DNA from: Neoechinorhynchus agilis
Taxonomy: Eukaryota; Animalia; Acanthocephala
Assembly: GCA_051530055.1 (NCBI GenBank)
Contig: CM121342.1
Span: forward strand, 5,827,489-5,891,488
Direction: 5' to 3'
DNA: 64,000 nt
This document shows positions 1,780 to 61,428 of this stretch, in pieces. Positions within the stretch are counted from its first letter, which is position 1; every line of letters starts with the position of its first letter. Under the pieces are notes generated by a model. That model had not been told where the DNA came from. It worked only from the letters and a program-made list of their open reading frames with translations, and searched no databases. The position numbers and the translations under genes were made by a program.

Positions 1780-3205
1780 ATGTCGCACATCAGATCCTCG
1801 GTTGCCTTGAATGATCAGAACCGGAAAAAACAAGCGATTCACATAACTCACGTTCACTCGCCGACATGGATATGTTTTCAGTCTTCTTTAAAAATGAATC
1901 ACATTTGGGCAGAATGCGAGCAAATGTATGCAATGTTCCGCTCAAACCGCCTAAAACGAACTGAACCTCGACTCGATAAGCGTCTCTATATCTTACCACT
2001 CACTGACATCACTCAATCAACACTAATGCATCGGATTATCGTAATGGCAATAATTGGCGATTGTCTCGTTGTTTACTATGTAGACCGAGGCATTTTTGGA
2101 ATCGCTGATGCTAAATCGGTTTACGTGTGTCCAGCAACAATCGCTAAGCATCCATGGTCTCTAAGAGCATTTGGAATCAGCCCATATAATTTAAAAAGTG
2201 CAAATAATGAACAGTTTGATATTGGCGACGAGTTAGAAGGTCGCGATTTTGAATTGCATTATGAGCCCGACGACAAAGATTACAAAGTCTACGACGGAAC
2301 TAATCGTTGTTTTATTGACTTCTATGACCATGATTCAATGGAGATTGGTTATAGTCGATTTAGTAGGCAGCATCGTAAGATCGGCGATTTCGTTTTGACT
2401 CATTTAAGAAACTATCCGGGTTTCCGATTCAAACGCCGTAATCCTTTGGTTTGCAAAATCACTCGAATAATCGAGGAAAGCGATCAGTTCGAACTTTTGC
2501 TTCTGGAAAGTATGAGGGTTCAAAGTACTTTTGTGGCTGTGGGCAAACACGAAGTATTTGATCGAATGGTTGGAAAGGAAGCTAGTTTACGAGACATATT
2601 TGTACCTTTAGGGACGTATCGTGTAGGGCAGAACTGTGCCATGTGGATCTTCTTCAAGGCACTCTTTTGCAATAAAAATAGTGAAGATTGATGACGATGA
2701 TGGGCAGGAGGATCTTGTCAGTTTCGTTGCTCATTCCGAGATGGACGTAATTCTGTTCCGTGTTATCAGTTTGCGATTGGCCCGTCAAATCGATGTTGTC
2801 ACAAGTTCAAAAATAGACCACCATCTTAATCCGTGTCCGACTTCTTTGCTAGCAGCGAATCTATACGAAAATGGACCGCTTATCCGATGCAGGATTATCG
2901 AGAGAAACGATAAAATGAGCAAAGTCTCTATTATTGACATGAACCACGAAGCTGATGTAAATGAATGCCATAGCTCCCCATTGTGGTCTTCTATGGTACC
3001 CATCTCGTTGGGGTCATTTTGTGATAGAATTGAGCCTTTGGCTAGAAGATGCTTTATAAAACGTAAAGATGCTGCAATATCTAAAGAACTTCTAAGACTA
3101 AAACTTGTGGACGATTGGGTCACTATTAAGGTACTCGCTATGGACGTAAACCTTAAAGGTGATTTAGAATATGAGGTTGTGCTCGAAAACAATGAGTTGA
3201 TGTGA
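1780..3205 (+). CDS. Tandem extended-Tudor domain protein 2 (TDRD-like, piRNA-pathway type)
   Basis: Two eTudor-like units: RIIVMAIIGDCLVVYYVDRG...HPWS and LIRCRIIE...VSIIDMN...VPISLGSFCDRIEP. ORFs 1780-2691 and 2636-3205 join in frame (459 codons) after removing 2626-2674. Confidence 0.65.
2624..2674 (+). other. TA-flanked hairpin intervening sequence (49 nt removed)
   Basis: TA at 2624-25 and 2673-74; arms GCAGAACTGTGCC / GGCACTCTTTTGC; the join gives YRV-KIVKIDDDD and fixes the frameshift. Confidence 0.75.
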
Positions 3206-3819
3206 CTGTTTAAAAGAAAAGCGTGATTCTTGTGATTTAGTATCCTTGGATTTGGATCAAAATTGCGAAGGAACAAAGAAATTGCTATTTCACTGCAGTT
3301 GAGATAGAAAAATGCTTCACTCGGAATTGAGCTCCCACTTTGATGTCGCCTACGACTTTTACTGAAATCAGCGGTTCCAAAGATTCGAGTAAATTGCATC
3401 ACCGTTCTCAGATGGATCAATCAATTCATAGAGAATTTCTAAAATTGATTTTAATATGCCTGGATTTTGCTCGTATGGAACGTGAGAAATAAGGTTTTCA
3501 ACGAGATGGCATTCTTTGAAAAGATCCCGAAAGATTGAAATGTTCATTAGAAACGTTAACAATAGACGCGTTTGGTCCCGAATTACAAGACATTTCAAAT
3601 CGAGAAATGAAGACTTGTAATAACACGTTTATTGAAAATACAAAGAAAGTTTTAGGAGGACCCGTGTACCTTTGGGTCCTCCTCCGTTAATGTGGGAATA
3701 TGCAGTGGAGGGGTGTCCGTTAGGATGGGAATATCCGGTCGGAGGGAGTAGAAGGAATTTCGTTCGGGTGGGGATGTGTCCGTTCGATTGAGAATATCCG
3801 GTTGGGTTGGAAGGTCCGT

Positions 3820-5130
3820 TCTGGTGGGAATTGGTGTCTATTGCTTGCAGGAGCGCTTGTAAGGTCGATCTTTCCTCAGAATCATTTCAGGTTATGATAT
3901 CCGAGCGAAGGTTGGTCTTTCCTCAGAATCATTTCAGGTTATGATATCCGAGCGAAGGTTGGTCTTTCCTCAGAATCATTTCAGGTTATGATATCCGAGC
4001 GAAGGTTGGTCTTTCCTCAGAATCATTTCAGGTTATGATATCCGAGCGAAGGTTGGTCTTTCCTCAGAATCATTTCAGGTTATGATATCCGAGCGAAGGT
4101 TGGTCTTTCATCAGAATCATTTCAGGTTATGATATCCGAGCGAAGGTTGGTCTTTCCTCAGAATCATTTCAGGTTATGATATCCGAGCGAAGGTTGGTCT
4201 TTCCTCAGAATCATTTCAGGTTATGATATCCGAGCGAAGGTTGGTCTTTCCTCAGAATCATTTCAGGTTATGATATCCGAGCGAAGGTTGGTCTTTCATC
4301 AGAATCATTTCAGGTTATGATATCCGAGCGAAGGTTGGTCTTTCATCAGGTTCATTTCAAGTTATGATATCCGAACGAAGGTTGGTCTTTCCTCAGAATC
4401 ATTTCAGGTTATGATATCCGAGCGAAGGTTGGTCTTTCCTCAGAATCATTTCAGGTTACGATATCCGAGCGAAGGTTGGTCTTTCCTCAGAATCATTTCA
4501 GGTTATGATATCCGAGCGAAGGTTGGTCTTTCCTCAGAATCATTTCAGGTTATGATATCCGAGAGAAGGTTGAACAGCATGGAGAAAGGAGCGTAGATAT
4601 AGTGAGGTCATGGGAGGATGAAACGAATTAGGATTATGAGTGTTGTGCTCGTATATAAACACGTTTTATTAATTTAAGAAAAGAACGATCCATACACTTG
4701 CCAGCATCTATCTTTGCTTAAAGGTGTCTGAATGACGGATGTTGAAGGCAAGGGAGGTGGGACTTGTTTTTGAAGGAGTTTTAATGTGCGATCGAAGGCT
4801 TTGTAAAGGAGATGACCGATTGGGAGTCTTTACTTGTTCTCCGGTTATTAAGGAAATATTGGACTTGGGGGAGTTAAGGAACGGGAATAAAATGTGGTAG
4901 AAATTATGGTTCAAGGGTTGATAGGCGTTTTGATTGTTTTATGAACATAGCATCAATGCATTCGGTGAGAGGGGGAATGTAAGTTGTGCAAATTTTAGAT
5001 GCTCTTTTGTGAAGTGACGCTTTATGCGACGAACTATGCAATCTTTTTCGTTTCGAGTGCTTTGGACCGTTTGTTGAACACTTTATTGATCTTCAAAACA
5101 AAAATTCGGGCGTTTAAATTTGTAGATATT
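3820..5130 (-). pseudogene. Degraded member of an unidentified gene/repeat family (paralog at 20690-21390)
   Basis: The minus strand shares blocks with 20690-21390 (HKRASKICT vs RKRASKICT; THNPNSFH; LYxRSFxHA). It is interrupted by stops and by the 47-bp array. Confidence 0.45.
3869..4572. repeat. 47-bp minisatellite, about 15 copies
   Basis: Unit TCTTTCCTCAGAATCATTTCAGGTTATGATATCCGAGCGAAGGTTGG with starts at 3869, 3916 and so on; a variant copy lies near 4340-4385. Confidence 0.97.
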
Positions 5131-5530
5131 ACTTTATTGTGTGGAAGAGAAAAATATACGAAAATTATTGATGTTTTCGTAAGTGAATAACGAGGACTTT
5201 GTGCTTTTCGTCTATTTGTTGATTTAGCAGCCTCATTTCACCAAAGTATTGATTCTTAAGGGCGAAACGTTCAAAATTCATACGCAAAAAACGATGAATT
5301 GTGAGCTCCGGTGGATATTCTTGGATTTATGATAAAGGGCTTTTGTTTCTATATTAATGAAGTTCTTTGAGAGTAAAGAATGCATTCGTGACGGAGTCAC
5401 AGCCCAGAAAATCATTTCCTTTATTTTTCGATGATTGAATGAAAAATTTTCCTGACGATATTTAAGAAATTAAGAATGTTAATCGATTGCTTGACGTATT
5501 TGACACGATCAAAGATTCGTGCATCAATAA

Positions 5531-14310: not shown

Positions 14311-15458
14311 CTAAAAAGTGCACTGTGCTAGAGGGAAACTGGCGGCTGTTGCCACACCGCACATATTGTTTCGATTTCGCGCCATTTTGATATATCCCTC
14401 ATCTCCCCAAGTAGGTCCCCAACTGTTCTTAACAAGCCAATAAGGTTCACTGACTTCAGTTCCATTAACGAATGTTTTTTCTACGCCTGCTCCTACAATG
14501 AGTACTCCATGATCCAATGCTTCCGGTGAGCATTCTTCGTCTCTGTAGACTCCCGACCGATAAAACATGAATTCCGGCGACGAAGCATCGATTCCAATAG
14601 CGATTGGACCGTGTTTCTTAAGTGCTTGTAAGAGAGCATCTTCATCGCCTTCCGGAAGGATATCGACGAAGCTCACACAATTCGCGGCAACATTGGTTCG
14701 ATTGAATCGACACAGATCTTCCATGGTTTCATAAGGATAACTCTGTTCAGAGTCTATTCCTCGATTGTCAATCACGTATTGGAAGCAAAAATCCATGAGA
14801 CCTCCGTTACATCCATTATTTCCCCATGCCGACGAACAATCGAGTATCTGTTGTTCGCTTAAAACGGGAAGGTTGTGCCCAGCCAGGGCGTAGGCCGCTT
14901 CCAAAGCACCGGTAGCCGCAAATGAGTAACATGAACCACAATGTCCTTGATCTTTGACGGCAGTCACCACTCCACGTTTCCTATAGTCTATATTGACAAC
15001 ACGATTGGTCTCGTTCTCTTTCACGAAGGCGTCTCGTCGGAACATTCGTCTTGATCGCGATCGTTGTTGATCGCTATATCGAAGACCATTTAGAGTCGAT
15101 TTTATCATACTCGGACTTAGGTCAGAATATGCATGCAGTCCGAGTCTATAAGTTGATCTGGGATTTGAGTTGTGTTTGGCGACTAAATGGACGTTTTCTA
15201 CGAAGTTTTGGAGGCTATCGTTTTCTTCGTGGACGTAAGTGTACATCACCGGTCATTTTTTTTGAGAAAGCAAAAAATGATCACTGATTATGCTTTTTTG
15301 AACGACGATTTCCAAAACTTCCAAAGAGACGAAATTGCATCGTTGAACGTCAAATCACTGGTAGCCAATCGTTCATCGAGCTCAAGTGCTGTCTTATAGT
15401 CACGACTGGAACAACAGGTAAGAAGACCAAGAATTAAAAGACTAAATCTCAATACCAT
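14311..15458 (-). CDS. CTSL: Cathepsin L-like papain-family cysteine protease (signal peptide, I29 propeptide, C1A domain)
   Basis: QGHCGSCYSF, CNGGLM, LDHGVL and YWLVKNSWG motifs; 367 codons after removing 47 nt TA-to-TA. Confidence 0.93.
15242..15290 (-). other. TA-flanked hairpin intervening sequence (47 nt removed)
   Basis: Sense strand: GCA-TA-ATCAGTGATCATTTTTT...AAAAAAAATGACCGGTGAT-G-TA-C. The join gives KKAYTYVHEE; I found no in-frame GT-AG option. Confidence 0.88.
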
Positions 15459-23773: not shown

Positions 23774-26700
23774 ATGGTTGAAGATCGTTCATTGTTGTTG
23801 AAGAATGTTCGTCGATGTTTGGCTAATGTTCTCTATCGAGTTAGTCGGAAAGTAGACAAACATCATCGTGTTTCGGTTGTCAATGACCCGGAGGAGGAAT
23901 CAGTGGCGATTAAACGGATTCGCCAAGATCCATATTATTATCTCGGTGATGGTCTTCGCCGCGTTCATCCTTATAAGTTCACATGGAAGACGTTTGCTAA
24001 AAGGAGATGGATCGGCCGGACGCTCATTGATGTTTATTCAAATGAGTTTGCTTATTTGGCAAGTGATGATACAAAAACTGAACAAGTCCGTGAAATGATT
24101 GAAACCGGAAAAATTCGAGTTAATGGACAGGTTAAAAGTTGTGAGTATGTTGTACACACGATCGAACCCATCGATTCCTATCGTGGACAAAAGAAAATGT
24201 GAATCGATGGGTTCTTAAGGGATAATGATCAGCTGACCAATGACGATCATAGGCATGAAAAACCCGTTCTGGACGCAGAAATCACAATTTGTAAAGAAAA
24301 TGATCAATATCTTGTTATTTGTAAACCAAGTTCAATACCAGTTCATCCTTGTGGAAATTATCGTTTCAATACGGTGACCAACATTCTTGAACATGAACAA
24401 GGACGAACTAACCTTAAACTGGTACATCGATTAGCTCAAAAGTGATCGGGTTTGAGGCTTTTCTCCAACGGTTACAAATGCCCATCCATCGGTGTCCTCT
24501 CCATGATCTCTAACGCATTGTTCTCCTTCTTAACTTTGCTTCAAAAAAAATGATTCACTCATCTAAATCGTTAATTTTTATCGTATTATTTTGAGAGCTT
24601 AAATTAAAGAAATGAAATTGGAATTAATTAAAGCAAATTTGATTAATGGGATATTAATCATTTCTCCAGAGAATCATACTCTCTTCTAGGCCGTAGATCC
24701 ATTTTCCGTCATTTCCTTTTGTTTTTAAATTCGGTTTTTTTTGAAGCCACATTCGGAAATGAATTATGCCTTCTCGATGATCTCTAACACATTGTTCTCC
24801 TTATCTTTGCTTCAAAAAAATGATTCACTCATCTAAATCGTTAATTTTTATCGTATTATTTTGAGAGCTTAAATTAAAGAAATGAAATTGGAATTAATTA
24901 AAGCAAATTTGATTAATGGGATATTAATCATTTCTCCTTTTAATCAATACTCTCTTCTAGGCTGTAGATCCATTTTCCGTCATTTCCTTTTGTTTTTAAA
25001 TTCGGTTTTTTTTGAAGCCACATTCGGAAATGAATTATGCCTTCTCGATGATCTCTAACACATTGTTCTCCTTATCTTTGCTTCAAAAAAATGATTCACT
25101 CATCTAAATCGTTAATTTTTATCGTATTATTTTGAGAGCTTAAATTAAAGAAATGAAATTGGAATTAATTAAAGCAAATTTGATTAATGGGATATTAATC
25201 ATTTCTCCATTTAATCAATACTCTCTTCTAGGCCGTAGATCCATTTTCCGTCATTTTCTTTTGTTTTTAAATTCGGTTTTTTTTGAAGCCACATTCGGAA
25301 ATGAATTATGCCTTCTCGATGATCTCTAACACATTGTTCTCCTTCTTATCTTTGCTTCAAAAAAATGATTCACTCATCTAAATCGTTAATTTTCATCGTA
25401 TTATTTTGAGAGCTAAATTAAAGAAATGAAATTGGAATTAATTAAAGCAAATTTGATTAATGGGATATTAATCATTTCTCCTTTTATTCAATACTCTCTT
25501 CTAGGCCGTAGATCCATTTTCCGTCATTTCCTTTTGTTTTTAAATTCGGTTTTTTTGAAGCCACATTCGGAAATGAATTATGCCTTCTCGATGATCTCTA
25601 ACACATTGTTCTCCTTATCTTTGCTTCAAAAAAAATGATTCACTCATCTAAATCGTTAATTTTTATCGTATTATTTTGAGAGCTTAAATTAAAGAAATGA
25701 AATTGGAATTAATTAAAGCAAATTTGATTAATGGGATATTAATCATTTCTCCTTTTAATCAATACTCTCTTCTAGGCCGTAGATCCATTTTCCGTCATTT
25801 TCTTTTGTTTTTAAATTCGGTTTTTTTGAAGCCACATTCGGAAATGAATTATGCCTTCTCCATGATCTCTAACGATTGTTCTCCTTATCTTTGCTTCAAA
25901 AAAATGATTCACTCATCTAAATCGTTAATTTTTATCGTATTATTTTGAGAGCTTAAATTAAAGAAATGAAATTGGAATTAATTAAAGCAAATTTGATTAA
26001 TGGGATATTAATCATTTCTCCTTTTATTCAATACTCTCTTCTAGGCCGTAGATCCATTTTCCGTCATTTCCTTTTGTTTTTAAATTCGGTTTTTTTGAAG
26101 CCACATTCGGAAATGAATTATGCCTTCTCCATGATCTCTAACACATTGTTCTCCTTATCTTTGCTTCAAAAAAATGATTCACTCATCTAAATCGTTAATT
26201 TTTATCGTATTATTTTGAGAGCTTAAATTAAAGAAATGAAATTGGAATTAATTTAGCAAATTTGATTAATGGGATATTAATCATTTCTCCTTTTATTCAA
26301 TACTCTCTTCTAGGCGCTAGATCCATTTTCCGTCATTTCCTTTTGTTTTTAAATTCGGTTTTTTTGAAGCCACATTCGGAAATGAATTATGCCTTCTCCA
26401 TGATCTCTAACACAGCTCCTCCTTATTCTAGTTTTCCAAAAAAATGATTCGGCCTCATCGGAATCGTTAATTTTTATCGTATTATTTTGAGAGCTTAAAT
26501 TAAAGAAATGAAATTGGAATTAATTAAAGCAAATTTGATTAATGGGATATTAATCATTTCTCCTTTTAATCAATACTCTCTTCTAGGCCGTAGATCCATT
26601 TTCCGTCATTTCCTTTTGTTTTTAAATTCGGTTTTTTTGAAGCCACATTCGGAAATGAATTATGCCTTCTCATGATCTCTAACACATTGTTCTCCTTATC

Positions 26701-28287
26701 TTTGCTTCAAAAAAATGATTCACTCATCTAAATCGTTAATTTTTATCGTATTATTTTGAGAGCTTAAATTAAAGAAATGAAATTGGAATTAATTAAAGCA
26801 AATTTGATTAATGGGATATTAATCATTTCTCCTTTTATTCAATACTCTCTTCTAGGCCGTAGATCCATTTTCCGTCATTTCCTTTTGTTTTTAAATTCGG
26901 TTTTTTTTAAGCCACATTCGGAAATGAATTATGCCTTCTCCATGATCTCTAACACATTGTTCTCCTTCTTAACTTTGTTATATTATTAATCCTTTTCATT
27001 TTTTTTAAACAATAAAAGATTTATTTTAAAATGATTAAATCGTCCCCCGGACGCTGACCGCATTTCCTCGTTGGATTGCGAGGCTTATTCTTTGTATCAG
27101 GAAAATCCTCTCGCGTCGCTCCCCTGTTAATCTTTCTCCTATGGATTCACTGCTTTCAAAAACCCAATGATTCACCCATCTAAATCGTTAATTTTAATCA
27201 TTTTGGAATTACTGTTTAAAGTCTTACTAAAAAATGATGATGAACCGCCGGTGAAGTTCGACGAACGTCTTTTTAATCGAAGACTTCTAACCAATAATTT
27301 CTTTGCACATTCCCCAATTTTTAAATCCTATTTTTTTGAATGTATTTTGAGAGCTTAAATTAAAGAAGAAGGGAAATAAAAGAGAAAAAAGTCGGATATC
27401 TTCACGAATTAATGCTATTTTCGACTCATTTTTCTAATATGTTGTCGAAAAAATTAATATTTATTGAACTCATGAAAGACGACATTTAAGATACTTATAA
27501 AGTCGGATACTCGTGATGGATTTCTGAGCTTATCTTCTTTTTTTGGTGTCGAATAAGACAAAATTAGTTCGGAAATATGGCCACCTTCGAAGGGATCACT
27601 TTTAGTTTAGACAGATGCACCAGTGGACTAATGATACTTGCCAAATCATCGAATGCGGCTACTTTGATTCAGAAACTATTTAACGATGGGAAAATCCGGA
27701 AAACTTATTTGGCAAAAGTGACTCATATTCCGATTCAATTCGATAGCGAACAAATCGTTAGTGTGGACAAGCGAGTTGCCGTAATCTCCTATAAACACGC
27801 TCTATGTCGAATAATAAACGAAGATTTAAGTGAGCGAGGAAAATCAGCTGTAACCTTATTTGAGGTCTTTGATCGCGAGAAAAGAATACTCAGTTGTAAG
27901 CCTATCAGCGGTCGAATGCATCAGATCAGACTTCATCTTCAATACCTCGGATGTCCAATAGTTGACGACAATGTGTACAACAATGTTCGAATATGGAAAT
28001 CCGATTTTTCGCAGAAAGACGAGGAAGTTATTGCCAATTTAGTGGAAGAACGAAAAAGATTGATTTTGGAAGCCACCTTATTAAATCAGGAGGGCAAAAC
28101 GGAATTAGCCGTGGATGCAGCTCATTTCGACGAAACGTGTAAAGAATGCAAATATCCATCGGCGGATCCTCGTCGGTCTCAAATGTCCATTTGTCTTCAT
28201 TCATATGAATTAGAAGTGGACGGTGAAAAGTACGTCTCGGATCTTCCACAATGGGCTCTGAGGTTTTGTTCTTATACACAAGATTAA
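23774..28287 (+). CDS. RPUSD2: RluA-family pseudouridine synthase
   Basis: GLRRVHPY.F...AKRRW.GR, HRHEKPV, KPSSIPVHPCG, HRLDRCTSG and GRMHQIRLHLQYLG motifs. 425 codons after removing two TA-to-TA segments (63 and 3176 nt). Confidence 0.9.
24153..24217 (+). other. TA-flanked hairpin intervening sequence (63 nt removed)
   Basis: Perfect 14-bp inverted repeat GAACCCATCGATTC (24164-77) / GAATCGATGGGTTC (24201-14); contains an in-frame TGA; the join gives CEYVVRDND. Confidence 0.72.
24432..27609 (+). other. Large TA-flanked intervening sequence with terminal stem (3176 nt removed)
   Basis: CAT CGA TTA G|...|AC AGA restores HRLDR; terminal arms AAAAGTGATC (24438-47) / GATCACTTTT (27594-603). Confidence 0.85.
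24499..26970. repeat. About 270-bp tandem array, about 9 copies, inside the RPUSD2 intervening sequence
   Basis: ATGAAATTGGAATTAATT recurs at about 270-bp spacing (e.g. 25426, 25697, 25966). Confidence 0.97.
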
Positions 28288-34860: not shown

Positions 34861-34885
34861 TCGATCATTTCTAAGTATTTTTTAA

Positions 34886-35951: not shown

Positions 35952-38900
35952 ATGAAATCAAAAGACAAACAGAATCCTAAAGCGTTTGGTGTTCAAAGCA
36001 TAGTATCCGGTGAGCGTTCATTTAGAAAACGAGCTGATATAGCTCAGAAACGAGCGCATTTGCCGAAAGTAGATCGTCAATGTGACGACCAAGACCCTGC
36101 TCCGGTTCTAGTTGCTGTTGCAGGACCTCCACGAGTCGGAAAATCAACTTTGATTCGATGTCTTTTGAAACAATACACTAATCAATCAGCGATTGGAACA
36201 ATTTGTGGCCCTGTGACAGTAATTGCCAACAAACACCGACGTCTAACCTTCCTTGAATGTCCAAACGACATATTCTCAATGATCGATGTTGTCAAATGTG
36301 CCGATCTGATTCTGCTGATGATCGATGCTAGTTTTGGCTTTCAAATGGAGATTTTTGAACTTCTCTCCATTTGCCAAGCTCATGGTTTCCCACGCATTAT
36401 GGGCGTACTCAATCACCTCGATGCAATTGAGAACATTGAGAAAAGACGTAAGACCAGGAAACAGCTTAAACAACGATTCTGGACCGAAGTTTACAAAGGA
36501 GCTAAAATGTTCTATCTTACACGCATTATCGATAACTCAATGTATGTAAAACAAGAAGTCCATAATTTATGTAGGTTCATTTCAGTAATGAAATTTAATG
36601 ATCCACCAACGTGGAGATCTAATCATCCTTATGTTTTGGTCGATCGCATTGAAAAAGTCGCTCGAAAAAATTCAGAAGATGGCCTTTGTTCACTTCAATT
36701 TTATGGGTATTTGCGAGGAACTGTCAATATGAGACAAAAATGTAGAGTTCACTTGGCTGGTTGCGGCGATTTTGACGTTTGCAATATCCAAAAGTGCTCT
36801 GATCCATGTCGCCTTCCAGACAAAGATGAGGGGAAAAAAAGACGAAGGTCGCTGAAACATATTGAACGAGGTATTTATGGACATTTTTGTGGACTTGGTG
36901 GGATTCTGTATGACGAGAACACTGTCGTTATCGATCTTGCCGGATCACATGCTCAAAATACAAACGAAAAAAATGCACTTACAGTGAATCGAGAAGATTT
37001 CTGGTCTTTTTTATCAGTGAAAGATTTTTTTGTAGAAACGTTAACTTTTTTTATGGAAAAGTTCCGAGCTACCTTACGTCTTATTTTAGAAAATTGCTCA
37101 TTCCGTTGATAAAAAATTAAATAGCCCGCTTCCAACGTTGGATTCGTGCCTTATCAGTGAAAGATTCTCTTTTTTACAGGAGTTTTAATTTTTTTATAGA
37201 AAATTCCGAGCTACCTTACGTCTTATTTTAGAAAATTGCTCATTCCGTCGATAAAAAATTAAATAGCCCGCTTCCAACGTTGGATTCGTGCCTTATCAGT
37301 GAAAGATTCTCTTTTTTTACAGGAGTTTTAATTTTTTTATAGAAAAATTCCGAGCTACCTTACGTCTTATTTTAGAAAATTGCTCATTCCGTCGATAAAA
37401 AATTAAATAGCCACCTTTTAACGTTGGATTCGTGCCTTATCAGTGAAAGATTCTTTTTTTACAGGAGTTTTAATTTTTTTATAGAAAAATTCCGAGCTAC
37501 CTTACGTCTTATTTTAGAAAATTGCTCATTCCGTCGATAAAAAATTAAATAGCCACCTTTTAACGTTGGATTCATGCCTTATCAGTGAAAGATTCTCTTT
37601 TTTTACAGGAGTTTTAATTTTTTTATAGAAAAATTCCGAGCTACCTTACGTCTTATTTTAGAAAATTGCTCATTCCGTCGATAAAAAATTAAATAGCCAC
37701 CTTTTAACGTTGGATTCGTGCCTTATCAGTGGAAGATTCTTTTTTACAGGAGTTTTAATTTTTTTATGGAAAAGTTCCGAGCTACCTTACGTCTTATTTT
37801 AGAAAATTGCTCATTCCGTTGATAAAAAAATTAAATAGTCCGCTTCCAACGTTGGATTCGTTCCTTATTTGTGAAATGGCTCTGACGGCATAAATTGTCT
37901 CAATTACACGACGATCGACACAGAATTTACGATATGATCTTTTGTTAGAAGTGTTATTTTTCGTGACCCTTTGAATATCTTTTTTTAATCTGATGTAAAA
38001 GGTACCTCGGAGGTATTATAGTGTTGCTGAGGGGATTCCTACTCTCCGGACAATAAAGATATTGATTTATTGCGATATTTCGCCGTGTAAATCCAGCATT
38101 CTCAAGCATTAATCCAACTTCAAAAAGTTTTAAAGATGCTGGATTTGCCCAGCGAAATATCGGAATAAATCAATATCTTTATTGTCCGGAGAGTAGGAAT
38201 CACCTCAGCAACATATCTTTTTTTATTAAAGACGTTCTGCGAAGTAAACGTCTTTTAACAGAGTTCGTAGATGACTAAATGAAGACTTTTAAATAATAAT
38301 TATAAAACACGGTACCTCCTCTTAGATTAAGCGTTTTTGAGACTGGATTTGAGATATTGCGAAGGGCAAACCTTTTTTTAAGAGAGAATGTTCTAGATTA
38401 AACAGCCCAACTAATTTCTCACAGTTTTTCCTTTAGATCCAAAAGATGCTCACTGTGTAGAATGTCGATGTTAAAAATTTGTATTTCATAAAGTTTTTCA
38501 CTTGGTAAATAACGTGTTTTTTGTTTACTAAAAAGTTTCGTTCCTTGCAAACGTCAACGAGCTAATGATGAACCCGACGAACATTTATTAAATTCGATTG
38601 TTTTCGACACGAACTTCCCTTGTAAAATTGTTTATTTTTTTTATTGATGTGAATTAGAGAAACCACTTAACTCTGATGAAACGTGTTAAGAGTTCGTACA
38701 TTCCTTCGGATTCTCAGAGCTTCCTTCAACGAGATATTTCGTTTCCTTTGGTTGTGCGTCATTCTCGATCGTGGATTCGAACCCTTTGACCCTTTCGATT
38801 TACTGCGATAAACCCCAATGAAATCATCGGGGGAGTTATACAAGAGCCGACGATCGAGGAGGCTAAAGTCGATTCGAAATCCAACATCCGCATTGTCGCA

Positions 38901-40775
38901 TCGGACGCCAGTGATTGCGAAGAGAATGAAGGCACGGATGAGGACTTTGAAGACGGCGATATGGTCGAGATAGTGAAGGGTAAGGATTATGATGGCGAAC
39001 TTCCATTCAGTGAAAGTGACGACGACGACGATTGCAGTGTTCAATTCAGGGGTAATTTATTCACTCAAAAACAACATCATACCGATTGGAAGTCGATTGT
39101 TTATAAAGAAACGGCATTTTCGAATGATACGTCCGATGAGTTGGCCGGACTTTTTCGTTTAAAACAAAAATCAAACATTGATATGGACGATTATCATCAC
39201 CGAACAATCGAATCATCAGGCGCTCAAAATATTCAAGAACTGACCAATCTGATTAAAAATTGTTTCGTAACTGGTCAATGGGATGAAAATACCGACGCAG
39301 AAGCTCTTCTAGATGCTCACGATAATGAGGAGGATACTCATCACCCGGCTGAAGCATTACGATCACATGGCCCTGATTTTGAGGGGGAGGAGGAAAGTTC
39401 ATTTTTAAAAGAATTGAATGATCAGGCGGCTAAACAGGAGAAGTTGAACAAAACAATTTTGGGCTCTATGAGTGAAAAAGAGCGACTAAACATTGAAGGA
39501 TATAGGCAGGGGATGTATTTAAGACTGGAAATCGACAAAGTGCCAATTGAGTTTATTAATAATTTCGTTCCATCTGTTCCTATTCTCATTGGTGGACTAA
39601 ATTCTTTAAATCATGGATCATCGAGTGATCCTTTTTGTTGAAGATGTTTTATTAGAAACAAAAGGAGTCGCTTAATGATCCATGTCATAGAAAGTGGATT
39701 TGGCATCGTTCATGTTCGTCTACGAAAACATCGTTGGCATAAAAAGATTTTAAAGTGTCGTGATCCAGTGATAATATCAATGGGATGGCGGAAATTCCAA
39801 GTAACGCCAGTTCTGTTCGGTCAGGACCATAATATGAGAAATCGATTTCTTAAATATACACCGGAGCATTCTTATTGCCATGCAGCGTTCTATGGACCAA
39901 CTTATCCGAGAAATACCGGATGCCTTTTCATGGTAGATACATCGCCTACTTCTCAGAACTTTCGAATAGCCGGACTCGGAGTAACACTCGAATCGAACAA
40001 ATCATTAAAGATTGTAAAAAAGTTGAAGCTTACCGGCGAACCGTACCAAGTGTTCCGGAAAACATGTTTTGTTAAAGGAATGTTCCACAGTGCACTCGAG
40101 GTTGCAAAATTCGAAGGAGCTGCCATTAAGACGGTAAGTGGGATTCGTGGACAGCTAAAAAAAGCTTTAAATACTCCCAATGGCGCATTCAGAGCTACAT
40201 TCGAAGATAAATTGAAACTCAGTGATATTGTTTTTCTGAGAGCTTGGGTACCTGTTCAGATACCTAAATTCTATAAAGTAGTAAATAATCTGTTGCTACC
40301 TATCAATGAGAAACATCTATGGACAATGATGCGGACGGTCGGACAAATCAAACGAGATTTGGGAATAAAGTTTGAGCCTAAGGTAGATAGCCTATACAGA
40401 GAAATAAACGAGAGACCCCAAGTACGGTTCTTCGCTCCTTTGCATATCCCTGCTGAACTTCAGAAGGAACTTCCTTTTAAAATTAAACAACGTGTTGTTC
40501 CTAAGATCGAAAATCCTATTGAGAATTTGAGACCACCTATAGTAAAGGATCTAAAAGAAAAGGAAATATCCGAATATGTTAAAAAACTAAAAATCCTTTA
40601 TAAAAAAAGGTGTATATATCGAGAGCAAAAGAAGAAGGCTCATAATAGACAAAGGAATGCTGAAAAGAAAAAGATGGAGGAAAAAGCCATTAGAAATAAA
40701 CCGAAGAAATGGTACAGTAACGAACCAAACAGAAAAACTAAAGCTATGAAACGTACTAATAAAAGAAAGACTTGA
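35952..40775 (+). CDS. BMS1: Ribosome biogenesis GTPase BMS1
   Basis: [66 protein letters not shown] and [10 protein letters not shown] motifs. The only interruptions are two TA-bounded segments; 974 codons with junctions 36982-38802 and 39609-39689. Confidence 0.95.
37005..37875. repeat. About 143-bp tandem array, about 6 copies, inside BMS1 intervening sequence 1
   Basis: CCGAGCTACC at 37064, 37206, 37350, 37492, 37636 and 37777. Confidence 0.95.
38022..38213. mobile_element. Foldback MITE nested in BMS1 intervening sequence 1
   Basis: TGTTGCTGAGGGGATTCCTACTCTCCGGACAATAAAGATATTGATTTATT / AATAAATCAATATCTTTATTGTCCGGAGAGTAGGAATCACCTCAGCAACA; TA at 38019-20 and 38214-15. Confidence 0.85.
39607..39689 (+). 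other. TA-flanked hairpin intervening sequence (81 nt removed)
   Basis: Perfect arms CATGGATCAT (39612-21) / ATGATCCATG (39675-84) plus inner stems; contains an in-frame TGA; the join gives GGLNSLESGFGIV. Confidence 0.82.
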
Positions 40776-49948: not shown

Positions 49949-50106
49949 ATAATAAACAGGCATGACATTATTGATTTATTTGAAATATTTCAAACGAGGT
50001 ATGCTCGCATCTTCAGTCGTTTTGTTTGTAAGTTTTTTAACTATTTAAGCTAATAGAATTCGCGAAATATTTCAAATAAATCAATAATGTCATGCCTGTT
50101 TATTAT
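49949..50106. mobile_element. Foldback MITE
   Basis: 43-bp inverted repeat ATAATAAACAGGCATGACATTATTGATTTATTTGAAATATTTC and its reverse complement. Confidence 0.85.
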
Positions 50107-55200: not shown

Positions 55201-56558
55201 ATGACTGCTGGGATTTTGTGGATTTTATTATTGTCCGGGTAAGCTCAAAAATATACGTCTATTTCTAACAGCCATAAAACTATTAGTATCAAACATGTTC
55301 GATCCAAAGCATTGTTGAAGCCGTCAGATTACAATGATGATTACGAATGGGAAAAATCTGATGAAATTGATCCGCTGGTTCGTTACATTACCCATACGGA
55401 AATGATTAATATGTTCCGTGCACTTGAAGAGCACTTTCCTCGTGTTTGCCACGTCTATGAAATCGGAAAAAGTGTAGAAGGGCGCTCGCTTTTAGCCATA
55501 CAACTGACTGATTTTGAAGATGAGGACGATGGCTTAAAACCAATGGTTAAATATATTGGAAATATGCATGGGGATGAGGCTGTATCCAGGCAAATGATGA
55601 TTCAACTCGCAATTCATTTACACATTGATTATGCTTCTGGGCTGCTAGGGTACATAATCATTGGTTAGCAAGCAGTTTTTACTCAAATGATCGTGATATT
55701 TGCCATCTCTTAAAGAAAACAGAAATTCACATTTTACCAACGATGAACCCGGACGGATTCAGTCGGTCTATAGAGGGTAAATGTGACACAATTCAAGTGA
55801 AAGGCTACTATACGCGAGCAAACGCAAACGGCATTGATTTAAATCGCGATTTTCCTCTAGAAGCAAAAATTGGGAATCATCAACCGGAAACACTGGCAGT
55901 TATGAATTGGACTCTTAGTAATCCATTCGTCCTTTCTGCTAACTTTCACGGTGGAGCCCTTCTTGTGTCCTATCTTTATGACCATTCTAAATCGAACAAA
56001 AAAGAGTACAGCAAATCTCCAGACGATGAACTCTCACAATTTTTAGCAAATATATACGCAACCAATCATAAAACGATTTCCCGAGGTGATCAATGCAGTC
56101 CATCAGATCCTCAGTACATCACAAATGGAGCCGAATGGTACCCGTTCAATGGATCTCTTCAAGATTTTACTTATATGTACAGTAATTGCATTGATATTAC
56201 TGTTGAAATTTCCTGTTGCAAACATCCGAAAAGCTCAGAATTGAGGACTTTTTGGGCGGATAATAAAGATGCTCTAATTGAACTCATAAAAGCCGTTCAT
56301 ATGGGCGTCAAGGGATTTGTCACAGATGGAGATACCGGAGAACCTCTACGAGATGTTCATATTCGGGTTCAAGGTAATGGAAAAATTACAAAGACGGATT
56401 CTAATGGACGTTTTTGGCGCTTACTCGTACCTGGACACACTTACACCCTCTCCTTTAAAGCTCAAGGATATCAACGAGAGGTAATAAAGGATCTGTATGT
56501 TCCATACGACAAAATGTGGAGAATGGATGTTGAACTTTTCAAGGCGAACACTCGCTAG
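55201..56558 (+). CDS. M14B metallocarboxypeptidase (single-domain CPD/CPM/CPE type, with transthyretin-like C-terminal domain)
   Basis: Signal peptide; IGKSVEGR, GNMHGDE, MNPDG, RANANGIDLNRDF, ANFHGG, ITVEISCCKHP and GVKGFV motifs. One GT-AG intron (55239-55271) plus a 47-nt TA segment; 426 codons. Confidence 0.92.
55619..55667 (+). other. TA-flanked hairpin intervening sequence (47 nt removed)
   Basis: TA-CA-CATTGATTATG...CATAATCATTG-GT-TA; the join gives LAIHL-ASSFYSND and fixes the frameshift. Confidence 0.83.
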
Positions 56559-57033: not shown

Positions 57034-57106
57034 GCCGAGGTGGTCTAGTGGATTAATCCTCTTGATCCCAGTTTGTTGGGTCAAATGGTTCGAATCCACG
57101 ATCGCC
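57034..57106 (+). pseudogene. tRNA-like element (tRNA pseudogene or SINE head)
   Basis: A-box TGGTCTAGTGG (57041-51) and B-box GGTTCGAATCC (57087-97) at tRNA spacing; acceptor and T stems are imperfect. Confidence 0.6.
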
Positions 57107-59283: not shown

Positions 59284-59329
59284 CTATTTTGGTGGAGTGT
59301 CAACTGATTTTTCAACCGCATGTTATTTT

Positions 59330-59763: not shown

Positions 59764-60237
59764 GGTTTGTTTTCAATCGTGTTAGTTGCCGAAATAAGGA
59801 CAATCATTAAAAATTTAAAATATTAAAAACCCATAGGAGGATAAAAATTTCATCGCATTTGAGCCCCGAACGGTATTTTTTATTTTTGGCGTTGTACAAT
59901 CGCTACTTATAAATGTTTATATATTTTCAAGCACTCATTTTTTAGGATTTTTTTTGAAATCAACCAACGTTAGAGAACGATTGAAAACTCAATATAGTAC
60001 GCGATTATTATTTAGGACTGAACAATGGAAAAACAAAGAAGTTTGCGGAGATTTCAAAAATTATCAAGCAGCAGGTTGATGAAATTTTTTCCTCTCCGGA
60101 ACACCGCCTTTATGGAATGCGATTTGTGTGGACACGCTTGCCCCCAGTAATTTTCCCTTTTCAAAAAAGAGCCCTGGAGGTTCAGCGGTCGTAGCTGAGG
60201 AACGCTAGCGTTAAAATTATAGAGAGCTCCTAAGGAA

Positions 60238-60350
60238 TTACCATTTCGTCCCTTTTGCCGTGGAAACGTATGGAGCCTTGGGGCCATCAGCGCTCACTTT
60301 CCTCGACGATTTGGGACGAAGAGGATGACTGGGGAACCGCGCTCCTTGGA
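60238..60350 (+). mobile_element. CRE endonuclease-domain relic (divergent subfamily)
   Basis: YHFVPFAVETYGALG / SALTFLDDLGRR / MTGEPRSLDF with small frameshifts. Confidence 0.75.
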
Positions 60351-60799
60351 TTTTCAAAATTGTAGTACCTTCTGAGGTTTGCAGATTAAAACTTTTATTT
60401 GTCGAACAGCAAACCCTTCCCCACCACGAATAATAACCTTGTTCAAAACGAAATCGATACCAAAACAATGTTGCCTCCACGTTTGACAAGTTGCAGTACA
60501 AATACTCAGGGTCCTAAATATGGACATAAACAAAGAAAAGGAAGGCGTAAATCTGACCGAGATATATGCGAGGAAACGCTGCCAGTATACTGGCAACGTC
60601 GGGATGTTTACAAGAATGAAAAACGAAATAGTAAAATAAACGACTCTAACCCCGAATTTTTGCACTGCGAAATATTATCCATACGCACTATCGATCCATG
60701 AAAACATCGGAAAAAGCAACGATTTCTAAATCTTGAAATTCACATTCAAACTTTTAAGAGATAAAAGCAAGCACAGAAATCACTATTAAATGGTAGCCA

Positions 60800-61428
60800 T
60801 TACGACAAACTGAATGAGACTATGATATCGTCTATGTGTTCAACCTTTGTTTTTGCTACTGCAGAAGATATTGTTTTTGCCAAGTTTCGTGTTTGTTCAT
60901 AGAGTTCTTTTGGAGGCAATGGTTGCTCAAAAAGTTCATTGACATTAGTTGTCCAATCTGAATGAATGATCACTTTCGGGTTAAGAAATACAGGAGTTTC
61001 AAGAATGCCTAGTTGATGTTCGTATAAGGCTAAAAGTATCTTTAGAATTCATCCCAATGATACTTTTCCTTCCCATAAAACCAAGCTCGGTCGGATAAAG
61101 CGCCCTTGTCGTCATCCACAAGACCAACATCAAGAATAGCGTCCGTTGTAGATGCCATGATTTCAATGACAGGATCTTCGTAGGAAGCTGCTGCAGCTTC
61201 TGTGAGAGGACGACGACTTCCACCGCCTCCACCACCAGTTCCGAAAATGCCACCTCCTCCAGTTTCATTAATGATATTACCAACTGAATCCACAGTTGAA
61301 CCATGGAAAAGGGATGACCGTGAAGTTACTGTATTTTGATTACCGCTGATAAGTCGTGTCCTTTCGTTCGGTTCATCGATGTCTCGAGAACAACAGCAGC
61401 AAAATGCACGCCTCAGGCCGCCTAACAT
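60800..61428 (-). CDS. LAMTOR1: Ragulator subunit LAMTOR1 (p18)
   Basis: N-terminal Cys cluster, ERTRLI, I-x-x-S-T-x-x-A-I-L-D-V, DRAWFY, and C-terminal KVEHIDDIIVSF; 192 codons after removing 53 nt TA-to-TA. Confidence 0.82.
61023..61077 (-). other. TA-flanked hairpin intervening sequence (53 nt removed)
   Basis: Sense strand: TA-TGGG-AAGG-AAAAGTATC...GATACTTTT-AG-CCTT-A-TA. The join gives DRAWFYEHQLGIL; the internal GT..AG pair is out of frame. Confidence 0.87.

What the first reader, a model, noticed from the sequence alone, without database searches (positions are those of the whole stretch)
2624..61077. A class of TA-bounded, hairpin-forming, non-GT-AG intervening sequences in conserved genes
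Seen in sequence: eight interruptions in six genes (Tudor-2, CTSL, RPUSD2 x2, BMS1 x2, carboxypeptidase, LAMTOR1) follow one rule. Each has a TA at both ends and inverted repeats starting 0-9 nt inside the ends. TA-to-TA removal (one TA kept) gives an in-frame protein, and in most cases the conserved register returns (HRLD, KKAY, DRAWFYEH, GGLNSLESGFG). The segments share no sequence with each other and no terminal consensus beyond TA, so structure rather than sequence appears to be conserved. They occur on both strands and in all codon phases. Established: spliceosomal introns need GT/GC-AG or AT-AC ends. Structure-defined or transposon-derived non-canonical introns are known in euglenids, Amoebophrya and Fritillaria, and TA-bounded elements leaving one TA are the IESs of Paramecium. 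Inference: this animal has a dedicated, possibly undescribed, excision system acting at the RNA or DNA level. BMS1 is essential, so it is unlikely to be simply inactivated twice.
Basis: partly seen in the sequence, partly recalled or inferred. Interest (0 to 1): 0.97.

Follow-up and report, generated by a model that had tools for sequence, protein, structure and literature searches.

The report
TA-flanked hairpin inserts splitting worm genes
In this stretch of the thorny-headed worm Neoechinorhynchus agilis, at least six short or long inverted-repeat inserts flanked by TA sit inside the coding sequence of five conserved genes, lack normal intron signals, and must somehow be cut out exactly for the genes to work; no such removal system is described for these animals in the literature I could search.

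Summary
The window is Neoechinorhynchus agilis (Acanthocephala), assembly GCA_051530055.1. Six of the eight claimed interruptions hold up: CTSL, RPUSD2 (two), the second one in BMS1, an M14 carboxypeptidase and LAMTOR1. Removing each from TA to TA, keeping one TA, gives a protein that aligns across the junction with solved structures or orthologues, without a gap in five and with a one-residue gap just after the junction in CTSL. No GT/GC-AG choice does as well, and CTSL has none at all. The Pomphorhynchus laevis RPUSD2 gene is one uninterrupted ORF, so both RPUSD2 inserts are lineage-specific. Five of the six fold as hairpins or have paired ends; the carboxypeptidase one does not. About 18 ordinary GT-AG introns in the same window do not fold this way. 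The Tudor-like and first BMS1 cases stay ambiguous, because GT-AG alternatives exist. TA-flanked palindromes also occur in an ordinary intron and between genes, so these are MITE-like insertions with a TA target-site duplication. NCBI gene models are truncated or split at them. Removal is inferred, not shown. I favour RNA-level, structure-guided excision, as in Euglena, Amoebophrya and Fritillaria. DNA-level excision and dead genes are not excluded. Public RNA-seq can decide.

The parts
15244..15290 (-). 47-nt TA-to-TA element in the propeptide-coding part of a cathepsin L gene (CDS about 14311-15458). It carries an in-frame TAA and shifts the frame.
   Evidence: Sequence read, coordinates. 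Hairpin z = -3.6. No GT/GC-AG pair restores the frame. The TA-TA product aligns with procathepsin L 7w33 through FKKA|YTYVHEEN, with a one-residue gap just after the junction. The NCBI model P0121 starts at the Met just after the element and so lacks the signal peptide. A second TA 6 nt downstream gives an equally valid TA-TA solution.
24153..24215 (+). 63-nt TA-to-TA element in RPUSD2 (CDS about 23774-28287). It has an in-frame TGA and a perfect 14-nt inverted repeat, GAACCCATCGATTC.
   Evidence: z = -4.0. The TA-TA product YVV|RDND aligns gaplessly with P. laevis YYI|REHD. A profile of 119 homologues gives 368.5 bits, against 353.2 for the GTATGT..TTAAG 75-nt alternative (24145-24219).
24432..27607 (+). 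3176-nt element in RPUSD2 with terminal inverted repeats (TAGCTCAAAAGTGATC ... GATCACTTTTAGTT) and a TTAG/TTAG direct repeat. Its interior is a 269-nt satellite of about 9 copies.
   Evidence: Removal restores the catalytic motif VHRL|DRCTSG, gapless against RluC 1xpi and the P. laevis orthologue. The GT/GC-AG alternatives destroy the motif. NCBI annotates the C-terminal part as a separate 236-aa gene.
39607..39687 (+). 81-nt almost fully palindromic TA-to-TA element in BMS1 (CDS about 35952-40775). It carries an in-frame TGA.
   Evidence: MFE = -32.1 kcal/mol, z = -7.4. The TA-TA product GGLNSL|ESGFG aligns without gaps over 228 residues with human BMS1 7mq9. NCBI splits the gene here into a 604-aa model (P0001, ending at the element's stop) and a 366-aa model.
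55630..55679 (+). 50-nt TA-to-TA element in an M14 (CPD/CPM-like) carboxypeptidase gene (55201-56558). It shifts the frame. The inverted repeat is weak.
   Evidence: The TA-TA product keeps the HGDE..NPDG spacing and aligns gaplessly with 3mn8 and 1h8l. It scores 11-15 bits above the two 59-nt GT/GC-AG options, one of which the 416-aa NCBI model must use. Hairpin not significant: z = +0.2; end-repeat score 1.
61025..61077 (-). 53-nt TA-to-TA hairpin element in a LAMTOR1-like gene (about 60800-61428). It shifts the frame.
   Evidence: z = -4.1. The TA-TA product DRAWF|YEHQLG aligns without a gap across the junction and on to the C-terminus with P0243, which matches Pfam LAMTOR at 1.6e-12. The NCBI model P0242 ends at the stop inside the element.
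2624..2672 (+). Ambiguous: a 49-nt (or 55-nt, to 2678) TA-to-TA hairpin segment at a frame break in a Tudor-like ORF.
   Evidence: z = -2.8. A GT(2621)..AG(2681) 61-nt intron and a 1-nt frameshift reading are equally possible. No Pfam Tudor hit for any reading.
36980..38800 (+). Ambiguous: the first BMS1 interruption. The best TA-TA candidate has only a short AATCGA-type inverted repeat. The interior holds a 142-nt satellite, a 192-nt palindrome (38022-38213) and a dispersed tRNA-like repeat.
   Evidence: It lies in the non-alignable acidic region. The GT(36984)..AG(38858) intron used by the NCBI model is equally compatible.
33756..33798 (.). 43-nt TA...TA palindrome of the same kind inside an ordinary GT-AG intron of NDUFA8 (intron 33721-33855). 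It shows that the elements are not confined to coding sequence.
   Evidence: z = -5.7.
49949..50106 (.). 158-nt intergenic palindromic MITE-like element. Similar ones lie at 52771-52877, 57349-57461 and 33144-33498.
   Evidence: End-repeat scan and outward extension.

Best explanation
The interruptions are non-autonomous DNA-transposon-like insertions. They have terminal inverted repeats and a duplicated TA target site, in the Tc1/mariner or Stowaway-MITE style. They landed in exons in the Neoechinorhynchus lineage. They persist because they are removed precisely, from TA to TA, from the pre-mRNA as nonconventional introns. In this model the paired inverted ends bring the two junctions together and an activity cuts and rejoins there. 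That activity could be a tolerant spliceosome or a separate machinery, and it works alongside normal GT-AG splicing.

Shown: the anatomy, the insertion origin, the lineage specificity, the distinctness from GT-AG introns, and the intact and conserved flanking ORFs.

Inferred: that removal happens at all, that it happens in RNA, and that the hairpin guides it.
For: (1) Six junctions are fixed by homologue alignments, and no canonical solution is equally good.
(2) TA direct repeats plus inverted ends: end-repeat alignment scores are at or above the 99th percentile of all TA-TA pairs for 4 of the 5 short robust elements; the 3.2-kb element, outside that scan, has 13-nt terminal repeats. Hairpin z runs from -3.6 to -7.4.
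(3) Similar TA-flanked palindromes lie in an intron and in intergenic DNA, so these are insertions.
(4) The P. laevis RPUSD2 gene is a single 1302-nt ORF, an empty site at both positions.
(5) The three RPUSD2 segments remain 30-51% identical to the P. laevis protein. The part of BMS1 just downstream of its element aligns with human BMS1 without gaps over 228 residues at 321 bits, and the whole 377-codon downstream ORF is stop-free.
(6) BMS1 (N-terminal part) and RPUSD2 each have only one annotated N. agilis protein among the hits. BUSCO duplication is about 2-3% (PMC12690905).
(7) Ordinary introns in the same genes have GT-AG ends, are mostly 41-54 nt (up to 225 nt) and show no structure, so the spliceosome is conventional here.
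(8) The published transcriptome is more BUSCO-complete and less fragmented than the genome (eukaryota C 71.0 / F 7.5 against C 58.4 / F 13.7). That is the direction expected if transcripts lack the inserts.
(9) Precedents exist in Euglena, Amoebophrya and Fritillaria.
Against: - No transcript evidence. The exact TA-TA-spliced CTSL and LAMTOR1 proteins are not in the 15-billion-protein collection, though that collection seems to lack N. agilis RNA assemblies.
- BRAKER, run with RNA-seq hints, truncated or split the genes instead of bridging them. That is expected if it only allows GT/GC-AG, but it is also what retained inserts would give.
- The carboxypeptidase element has no significant hairpin, so structure cannot be the whole signal.
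- The elements share no motif that a machinery could read apart from TA.
- The cases were picked by a reader looking for this rule.
Confidence: 0.58

Rival explanations
1. DNA-level excision. The elements are internal eliminated sequences, present in germline-dominated DNA of whole worms. A domesticated transposase plus end-joining would remove them precisely at the TA from somatic nuclei, as in Paramecium.
For: TA at both ends with one TA kept; single-copy short elements; a transposon-like origin. The DNA came from whole adult worms full of germline tissue and eggs (PMC12690905). Acanthocephalan soma is syncytial with few nuclei (my own knowledge).
Against: Germline cells themselves need BMS1, RPUSD2 and LAMTOR1. 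An animal has no silent germline nucleus that could carry broken housekeeping genes. The Paramecium end consensus TAYAGYNR is not present. I found no report of DNA elimination in acanthocephalans.
Confidence: 0.12
2. The inserts are not removed. These copies are insertionally inactivated genes, segregating null alleles or pseudogenes in a parasite with relaxed selection. The ORFs look intact only because the insertions are recent.
For: In-frame restoration follows automatically from a TA target-site duplication. Palindromic MITE-like elements with perfect 20-nt ends, which look young, are present nearby. The authors report many missing core genes. The NCBI models are truncated.
Against: That would mean six hits in five conserved genes within 64 kb, including essential, single-copy BMS1. 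The exonic elements have imperfect arms and no other copy in 71 kb, which does not suggest a very recent burst. All flanking ORFs are stop-free over hundreds of codons and conserved. The assembly represents the majority allele of a pool of worms.
Confidence: 0.13
3. Ordinary spliceosomal removal through nearby cryptic GT/GC-AG sites, giving slightly altered proteins. The hairpins would be passengers.
For: 5' splice sites in this genome are very loose (GT followed by almost anything). GT/GC-AG pairs that keep the frame exist for the Tudor-like break, both BMS1 breaks, RPUSD2_1, RPUSD2_2, LAMTOR1 and the carboxypeptidase.
Against: None exists for CTSL. For RPUSD2, BMS1_2, the carboxypeptidase and LAMTOR1, the canonical options delete or duplicate conserved residues and score 11-15 bits lower where measured.
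Confidence: 0.1
4. Assembly artefact: spurious small palindromes introduced by hybrid long-read assembly or polishing.
For: The assembly is a MaSuRCA hybrid of ONT, a few HiFi reads and Illumina.
Against: The elements are not copies of adjacent sequence. They carry clean TA duplications. One is 3.2 kb with a satellite inside. The same structures occur in non-coding DNA. K-mer completeness against Illumina reads is 96%.
Confidence: 0.03
5. Translational bypassing (ribosome hopping), as in T4 gene 60 or the byp elements of Magnusiomyces mitochondria.
For: Five of the six elements are 47-81 nt with a hairpin. The CTSL element starts with a stop codon right after the last sense codon.
Against: Take-off and landing codons do not match; only TA is shared, and in different codon positions. 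One element is 3.2 kb. Several elements shift the frame.
Confidence: 0.01

Closest known systems
Nonconventional introns of euglenids (Euglena gracilis, E. agilis)
   Same: They coexist with ordinary GT-AG introns in the same genes. Their ends are non-canonical. Inverted repeats near the ends can pair and bring the junctions together. Short direct, TSD-like repeats sit at the junctions. Lengths run from tens to thousands of nt. There is no polypyrimidine tract. A MITE origin is presumed (PMC11282704; PMC12501133).
   Different: The Euglena code, 5'-N3CDG ... CHG N5-6|R, is absent here (read). Here the only shared letters are TA at both ends. The host is an animal. Excision, circular products and order of removal are all untested.
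Introner elements / non-canonical introns of Amoebophrya (Syndiniales)
   Same: 8-20 nt inverted repeats form a hairpin that joins the exon borders. Short direct repeats overlap the junctions. Most elements cannot be placed in families. The splice machinery is unknown (PMC7789003).
   Different: The direct repeats there are 3-5 nt and variable. Here the repeat is TA (once TTAG). In Amoebophrya the splice positions relative to the hairpin vary and were defined by RNA-seq. Here RNA evidence is lacking.
Non-canonical introns of the tunicate Fritillaria borealis
   Same: This is the one animal in which most introns are MITE-derived and non-GT/AG, with terminal inverted repeats at the ends (bioRxiv 10.1101/2025.08.15.670264; PMC11282704).
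   Different: Fritillaria termini are mainly AG/AC and AG/AT, with polypyrimidine tracts, and are processed by a modified U2 spliceosome with duplicated U2AF. Canonical introns there are only 5%. In N. agilis, GT-AG introns are the majority in this window (about 18 against 6-8), and the odd class has TA ends and no pyrimidine tract.
Internal eliminated sequences (IES) of Paramecium
   Same: TA at both ends with one TA retained. Mostly short, single-copy elements interrupting coding sequence in any frame. Thought to derive from Tc1/mariner-type transposons (my own knowledge; PiggyMac paper listed).
   Different: IES are removed from DNA of a somatic nucleus, while a silent germline nucleus keeps them. 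They have a TAYAGYNR end consensus and are not whole-length hairpins. Animals have no such nuclear dualism.
Stowaway-like / Tc1-mariner-derived MITEs
   Same: TA target-site duplication, terminal inverted repeats, no coding capacity, fold-back structure. Palindromic relatives lie in non-coding DNA of the same window.
   Different: The exonic elements are unusually short (47-81 nt). Each is unique within 71 kb, with no family consensus. MITEs as such are not known to be excised precisely from transcripts.

Membership tests
U2-type spliceosomal intron | GT (or GC) at the 5' end and AG at the 3' end, giving the functional reading frame | tested here: not met
   CTSL has no such pair. For RPUSD2 x2, BMS1_2, the carboxypeptidase and LAMTOR1, the pairs that exist remove or duplicate conserved residues and score lower. 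It is met as an alternative for the Tudor-like and first BMS1 breaks.
U2-type spliceosomal intron | T-rich 3' end as in this genome's own introns (TTTTAG, TTAAG, ACAG) | tested here: not met
   The 3' ends are GGTGATG, GGGTTCT, TTTAGTT, CATGTCA, CAGTTTT and GCCTTA. The local GT-AG introns are listed.
U12-type (AT-AC) intron | 5' ATATCC consensus and AC (or AG) 3' end | tested here: not met
   All elements begin TAA, TAC, TAG or TAT, and none carries ATATCC at the 5' end. The AT-AC pairs listed lack the consensus.
Paramecium-type IES | TA at both boundaries, with one TA left after removal | tested here: met
   TA is the only direct repeat that gives a valid solution in all cases.
Paramecium-type IES | Degenerate end consensus TAYAGYNR | tested here: not met
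   The 5' ends are TAATCAGT, TACACACG, TAGCTCAA, TAAATCAT, TATGCTTC and TATGGGAA.
Paramecium-type IES | Present in germline DNA, absent from somatic DNA | not testable with these tools
   Only one assembly, from pooled whole worms, is available.
Tc1/mariner-type MITE (Stowaway-like) | TA target-site duplication flanking terminal inverted repeats | tested here: met
   End-repeat score is 9-10 (99th percentile or above) for CTSL, RPUSD2_1, BMS1_2 and LAMTOR1. RPUSD2_2 has 13-nt terminal repeats. The carboxypeptidase element fails with a score of 1.
Tc1/mariner-type MITE (Stowaway-like) | Multi-copy family with a consensus sequence | tested here: inconclusive
   No second copy of any exonic element in 71 kb, and no similarity among them. 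The remaining 46 Mb could not be searched.
Euglenid nonconventional intron | Pairing of inverted repeats close to both ends, with non-canonical borders and junctional direct repeats | tested here: met
   for 5 of 6 elements.
Euglenid nonconventional intron | CAG at +4..+6 and CTG at -8..-6 (5'-N3CDG/CHGN5-6|R code) | tested here: not met
   Ends listed; code taken from PMC12501133.
Euglenid nonconventional intron | Removed from pre-mRNA, released as a circle, after conventional splicing | not testable with these tools
   No N. agilis RNA data can be reached.
Fritillaria-type non-canonical intron | AG/AC or AG/AT termini with a pyrimidine tract, processed by the U2 spliceosome | tested here: not met
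   In none of the three registers allowed by the TA repeat do the termini read AG..AC or AG..AT. The mode of processing is not testable.
Introner elements (Micromonas, Aureococcus, dinoflagellates) | A TE that carries or co-opts GT-AG splice sites; many near-identical copies | tested here: not met
   No GT-AG ends. No copies in 71 kb.
Protein-only RNA splicing (BHB/tRNA endonuclease, IRE1-type) | Bulge-helix-bulge, or twin 7-nt loops, at the cut sites | tested here: not met
   The cut sites lie at the open base of one hairpin. Only the two TA could pair between the intron start and the 3' exon (structures). This was inspected by eye only.
Programmed translational bypass | Matching take-off and landing codons and a short gap | tested here: not met
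   Only TA is shared, and in different codon positions. One element is 3176 nt.

The most novel reading that the evidence does not exclude
An animal with Paramecium-like internal eliminated sequences. On this reading, thousands of TA-bounded, transposon-derived segments interrupt housekeeping genes in the DNA that dominates whole-worm preparations, and they are excised precisely from the DNA of expressing nuclei. A less extreme reading is also not excluded and is more likely (about 0.3): a spliceosome-independent, structure-guided cut-and-ligate pathway acting on animal mRNAs.
Probability: 0.1. Interest if true: 0.97.

Novelty: new variant of a known kind. Interest (0 to 1): 0.8.

Why it matters
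If the segments are removed from RNA, acanthocephalans would be a second, independent animal lineage, after the tunicate Fritillaria, in which transposon insertions in exons are tolerated through non-GT-AG excision. Here it would happen next to a normal-looking intron set. That makes it a clean system for asking how a cell recognises an intron by its ends and fold instead of by splice-site letters.

There is also an immediate practical consequence. Standard gene finders truncate or split genes at these elements: BMS1, RPUSD2, CTSL and LAMTOR1 in the NCBI annotation. Part of the 'massive loss of core genes' reported for acanthocephalans from BUSCO counts may therefore be an annotation artefact.

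At the density seen here, six in 64 kb of a 46-Mb genome, there could be thousands of such elements. That figure is an extrapolation, not a measurement.

The question can be settled with data already public: 74 RNA-seq libraries plus DNA reads.

Tried and rejected
- Rfam scan of the window: no hit. tRNA scan: none.
- Exact look-up of the predicted spliced CTSL and LAMTOR1 proteins: absent from the collection. Only the truncated NCBI CTSL model is present, so no transcript evidence could be had.
- Reverse-transcriptase query, meant to fetch more N. agilis loci: only distant hits of about 40% identity and no N. agilis copies. The search was wasted.
- Pfam on the spliced LAMTOR1, four readings of the Tudor-like region and several other ORFs: nothing. 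The LAMTOR1 identity was then rescued through P0243.
- PDB search with LAMTOR1: only a spurious glycine-linker match.
- Energy-only scan for TA..hairpin..TA over 71 kb: 258 hits. It is far too unspecific, and the known elements are not extreme by kcal/nt. It was replaced by an end-repeat alignment scan.
- Ungapped palindrome scan: misses most exonic elements.
- Supplement of the genome paper: no intron or transcript information.
- Considered and rejected as mechanisms: U12 introns, bulge-helix-bulge or IRE1 splicing, the Euglena CAG/CTG code, ribosomal bypass, and split-gene expression from the ATG found near three element 3' ends (useless for a secreted protease that would lose its signal peptide).
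- Other frame breaks in the window (MOV10-like 18114-18166, TTLL 51001-50950) turned out to have ordinary GT-AG solutions.

Full report
IDENTITY OF THE WINDOW
The N-terminal BMS1 ORF is 97% identical to NCBI protein ACOME3_006023 of Neoechinorhynchus agilis. The locus maps to GCA_051530055.1, CM121342.1, at about 5.83-5.90 Mb. N. agilis is an eoacanthocephalan with a 46.2-Mb genome published in December 2025 (PMC12690905). That paper and a companion paper (PMC12256650) never mention introns or splicing. Full-text searches combining acanthocephalans with introns and splice sites, or with DNA elimination, returned nothing, and a search on Pomphorhynchus laevis, genome and intron returned nothing relevant. 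A survey of 3,325 genomes for transposon-derived introns reports only two animal groups and does not mention rotifers or acanthocephalans.

WHAT IS IN THE SEQUENCE
I re-read every claimed site in three frames and fixed the TA-to-TA coordinates. I then asked three questions of each site.

(a) Does a homologue pin the junction? Six TA-TA products align across the junction, five of them without a gap:
- BMS1_2 (39607-39687): GGLNSL|ESGFG aligns with human BMS1 over 228 residues without a gap.
- Carboxypeptidase (55630-55679): the HGDE-to-NPDG stretch aligns without a gap with Drosophila and duck carboxypeptidase D.
- CTSL (15244-15290, minus strand): FKKA|YTYVHEEN aligns with the procathepsin L propeptide, with a one-residue gap just after the junction.
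- RPUSD2_2 (24432-27607): removal rebuilds the catalytic HRLDRxTSG motif.
- LAMTOR1 (61025-61077, minus strand): DRAWF|YEHQLG aligns without a gap across the junction and on to the C-terminus with P0243. That protein is the only distant hit in 1.8 billion representatives and is itself a Pfam LAMTOR protein.
- RPUSD2_1 (24153-24215): resolved by the Pomphorhynchus laevis orthologue. YVV|RDND aligns gaplessly with YYI|REHD. A profile of 119 homologues prefers the TA-TA product by 15 bits over the 75-nt GT-AG alternative.

(b) Is there a canonical alternative? I enumerated every GT/GC-AG (and AT-AC) pair that restores an open frame.
- CTSL has none.
- RPUSD2_2, BMS1_2, LAMTOR1 and the carboxypeptidase have some, but they delete or duplicate conserved residues. 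For the carboxypeptidase they cost 11-15 bits.
- Two cases remain open. The Tudor-like break (2624) also fits a GT(2621)..AG(2681) intron or a 1-nt frameshift, and no Tudor domain is detectable. The first BMS1 break lies in an unalignable acidic region and fits a GT(36984)..AG(38858) intron, the one the NCBI model uses.

(c) Is the hairpin more than chance? With dinucleotide-preserving shuffles the z-scores are:
- Tudor-like: -2.8
- CTSL: -3.6
- RPUSD2_1: -4.0
- BMS1_2: -7.4
- LAMTOR1: -4.1
- Carboxypeptidase: +0.2 (genomic background)
The 3.2-kb RPUSD2 element has 13-nt terminal inverted repeats around a 269-nt satellite.

THE CONTROL CLASS
The same window is full of ordinary introns:
- seven in RagA, four in a TTLL gene and two in NDUFA8;
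- one each in a TRAP-beta-like gene, the MOV10-like helicase and the carboxypeptidase;
- probably one each in LAMTOR1 and the Tudor-like gene.
They start with GT, end with (T/A)(T/A)AG or ACAG, and are mostly 41-54 nt. Their folding z-scores scatter around zero. The only low value (-2.3) belongs to the NDUFA8 intron that contains an embedded palindrome. So the spliceosome of this animal looks conventional, and the TA-bounded segments are a separate class.

TA SPECIFICITY
For each case I listed all in-frame, stop-free deletions whose ends lie within 12 nt of the hairpin base.
- TA is the only dinucleotide direct repeat that gives a solution in all seven cases tested. Every other dinucleotide works in three or fewer.
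- Random window pairs give a TA-TA solution 17% of the time.
- The cases were hand-picked, so the nominal probability is optimistic.
- Because TA is duplicated, the cut may lie before, within or after it.
- The kept TA occupies codon positions 1-2 or 2-3, so 'all phases' is an overstatement.

ORIGIN
- The elements share no sequence with one another and have no second copy in 71 kb.
- A 43-nt TA...TA palindrome sits inside a normal NDUFA8 intron (33756-33798).
- Larger palindromic, MITE-like elements with 20-nt perfect arms lie between genes at 49949-50106, 52771-52877, 57349-57461 and 33144-33498, and inside the first BMS1 interruption at 38022-38213.
- End-repeat alignment scores of four of the five short robust elements reach or exceed the 99th percentile of all TA-TA pairs.
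- The P. laevis RPUSD2 gene is one uninterrupted 1302-nt ORF. Both N. agilis RPUSD2 elements are therefore insertions in the Neoechinorhynchus lineage. At the first site P. laevis even has a TA in the homologous codon.
Taken together, this is the anatomy of non-autonomous DNA transposons with a TA target-site duplication. A caveat follows: an insertion that duplicates TA always restores the frame when removed TA-to-TA.

WHY REMOVAL IS STILL THE BEST READING
- Six insertions lie in five conserved genes within 64 kb.
- BMS1 is indispensable for 40S ribosome biogenesis in eukaryotes (established knowledge). Only one N. agilis BMS1 (N-terminal part searched) and one N. agilis RPUSD2 appear among the annotated proteins. 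BUSCO duplication in the assembly is about 2-3%.
- All ORF pieces are stop-free over hundreds of codons and remain conserved. The three RPUSD2 segments are 30%, 51% and 38% identical to the P. laevis protein. The BMS1 part just downstream of its element scores 321 bits against human BMS1.
- The arms of the exonic hairpins are imperfect and the elements are single-copy here, which does not suggest a very recent burst.
- The published transcriptome is more complete and less fragmented than the genome by BUSCO (eukaryota C 71.0 / F 7.5 against C 58.4 / F 13.7). That is the direction expected if transcripts lack the inserts, but it is weak evidence.

RNA OR DNA
I could not test this.
- The exact spliced CTSL and LAMTOR1 proteins are not in the protein collection, which appears to hold only the NCBI annotation for this species.
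- That annotation came from BRAKER with RNA-seq hints. It truncates CTSL (the model starts after the element) and LAMTOR1 (the model ends in the element). It splits BMS1 into 604-aa and 366-aa genes and calls the RPUSD2 C-terminus as its own gene. It bridges the carboxypeptidase with an artificial 59-nt intron. This is uninformative, because the gene finder accepts only canonical splice sites.
- I favour RNA. Germline cells of an animal need these housekeeping genes too, and no silent germline nucleus exists to carry broken copies.
- RNA precedents with the same anatomy exist in Euglena, Amoebophrya and Fritillaria.
- The specific codes of those systems are not met: Euglena's CAG/CTG and Fritillaria's AG/AC or AG/AT with a pyrimidine tract. 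The Paramecium IES end consensus, U12 signals, bulge-helix-bulge geometry and bypass rules are not met either.

VERDICT
- The class is best described as TA-duplicating, inverted-repeat insertions in exons that are very probably removed precisely, most likely from RNA.
- It is a new variant of the known kind 'transposon-derived nonconventional introns', and I found no description of it for Acanthocephala or any spiralian in the searchable literature.
- It also predicts that part of the reported core-gene loss in these parasites is an annotation artefact.
- The decisive test is counting six junction k-mers in public reads, and it is simple.

Noticed in passing
window 35952-40775, 23774-28287, 14311-15458, 60800-61428, 55201-56558: The NCBI (BRAKER) gene models break at the elements. 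BMS1 is split into 604-aa and 366-aa genes. The RPUSD2 C-terminus is a separate 236-aa gene. CTSL lacks its signal peptide. LAMTOR1 is truncated to 108 aa. The carboxypeptidase is bridged by an artificial 59-nt intron. This may inflate gene counts and depress BUSCO scores for this genome.
   Followed up: partly
L004:10001-11302 (Pomphorhynchus laevis WNNJ02001662.1): The P. laevis RPUSD2 orthologue is a single intronless 433-codon ORF, whereas the N. agilis gene carries two TA-bounded elements.
   Followed up: yes
window 49949-50106, 52771-52877, 57349-57461, 38022-38213, 33144-33498, 16895-16973; extension about 66055-66142: Long palindromic, MITE-like elements (79-192 nt, arms up to about 45 nt) lie in non-coding DNA. 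Two of them (38060 and 49969) share the start TATTGATTTATT, hinting at a family.
   Followed up: partly
window 38720-38793, 57078-57176; extension 66582-66655: A dispersed repeat contains a tRNA T-arm-like GTGGATTCGAACC core and may be a SINE. One copy forms the 3' end of the first BMS1 interruption. ARAGORN finds no intact tRNA gene.
   Followed up: partly
window 3861-4572, 8853-9357, 12695-14233, 20778-21387, 22363-23693, 24498-26967, 30536-31542, 34880-35761, 37041-37876, 46608-48041, 61715-63995: The window holds an unusually high density of minisatellite arrays (periods 47-378 nt, 2-15 copies). Two of them lie inside the long gene interruptions. The 378-nt unit at 12695-14233 itself contains a 149-nt palindrome.
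   Followed up: no
window 5531-8700 (+) and 58020-59300 (-); extension about 65400-66000 and 69800-70500: There are non-LTR retrotransposon copies. The reverse transcriptase is about 40% identical to lepidopteran and other invertebrate elements. The ORF is broken near 8206. No N. agilis protein was annotated for them.
   Followed up: partly
window 41111-42742 and 44008-45637: A tandem duplication of about 2.9 kb carries a Lys/Glu-rich repetitive ORF (MCDKSLI..KEPIIVQES repeats) with no Pfam match tested. The second copy has a frame break at 44738-44826.
   Followed up: no
window 50950-51001 (-): One frame break in the TTLL gene can only be closed by a GT-AG intron of 28, 37 or 52 nt starting at the same GT. 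The 52-nt choice removes residues (KILKVVV) that look like part of the conserved TTL core, so the true junction is uncertain.
   Followed up: partly
window 701-3202 and 16953-20581: A Tudor-like multi-repeat ORF and a MOV10/UPF1-like helicase (AAA_11/AAA_12; 1111-aa NCBI model) lie within 15 kb of each other. Both are typical small-RNA/transposon-control genes. The Tudor assignment is not supported by Pfam.
   Followed up: partly
window 39675, 27577, 15252: In three of the six elements an in-frame ATG lies at or just upstream of the 3' junction, and the NCBI models start there. This is probably chance, but it would allow separate translation of the downstream parts.
   Followed up: no
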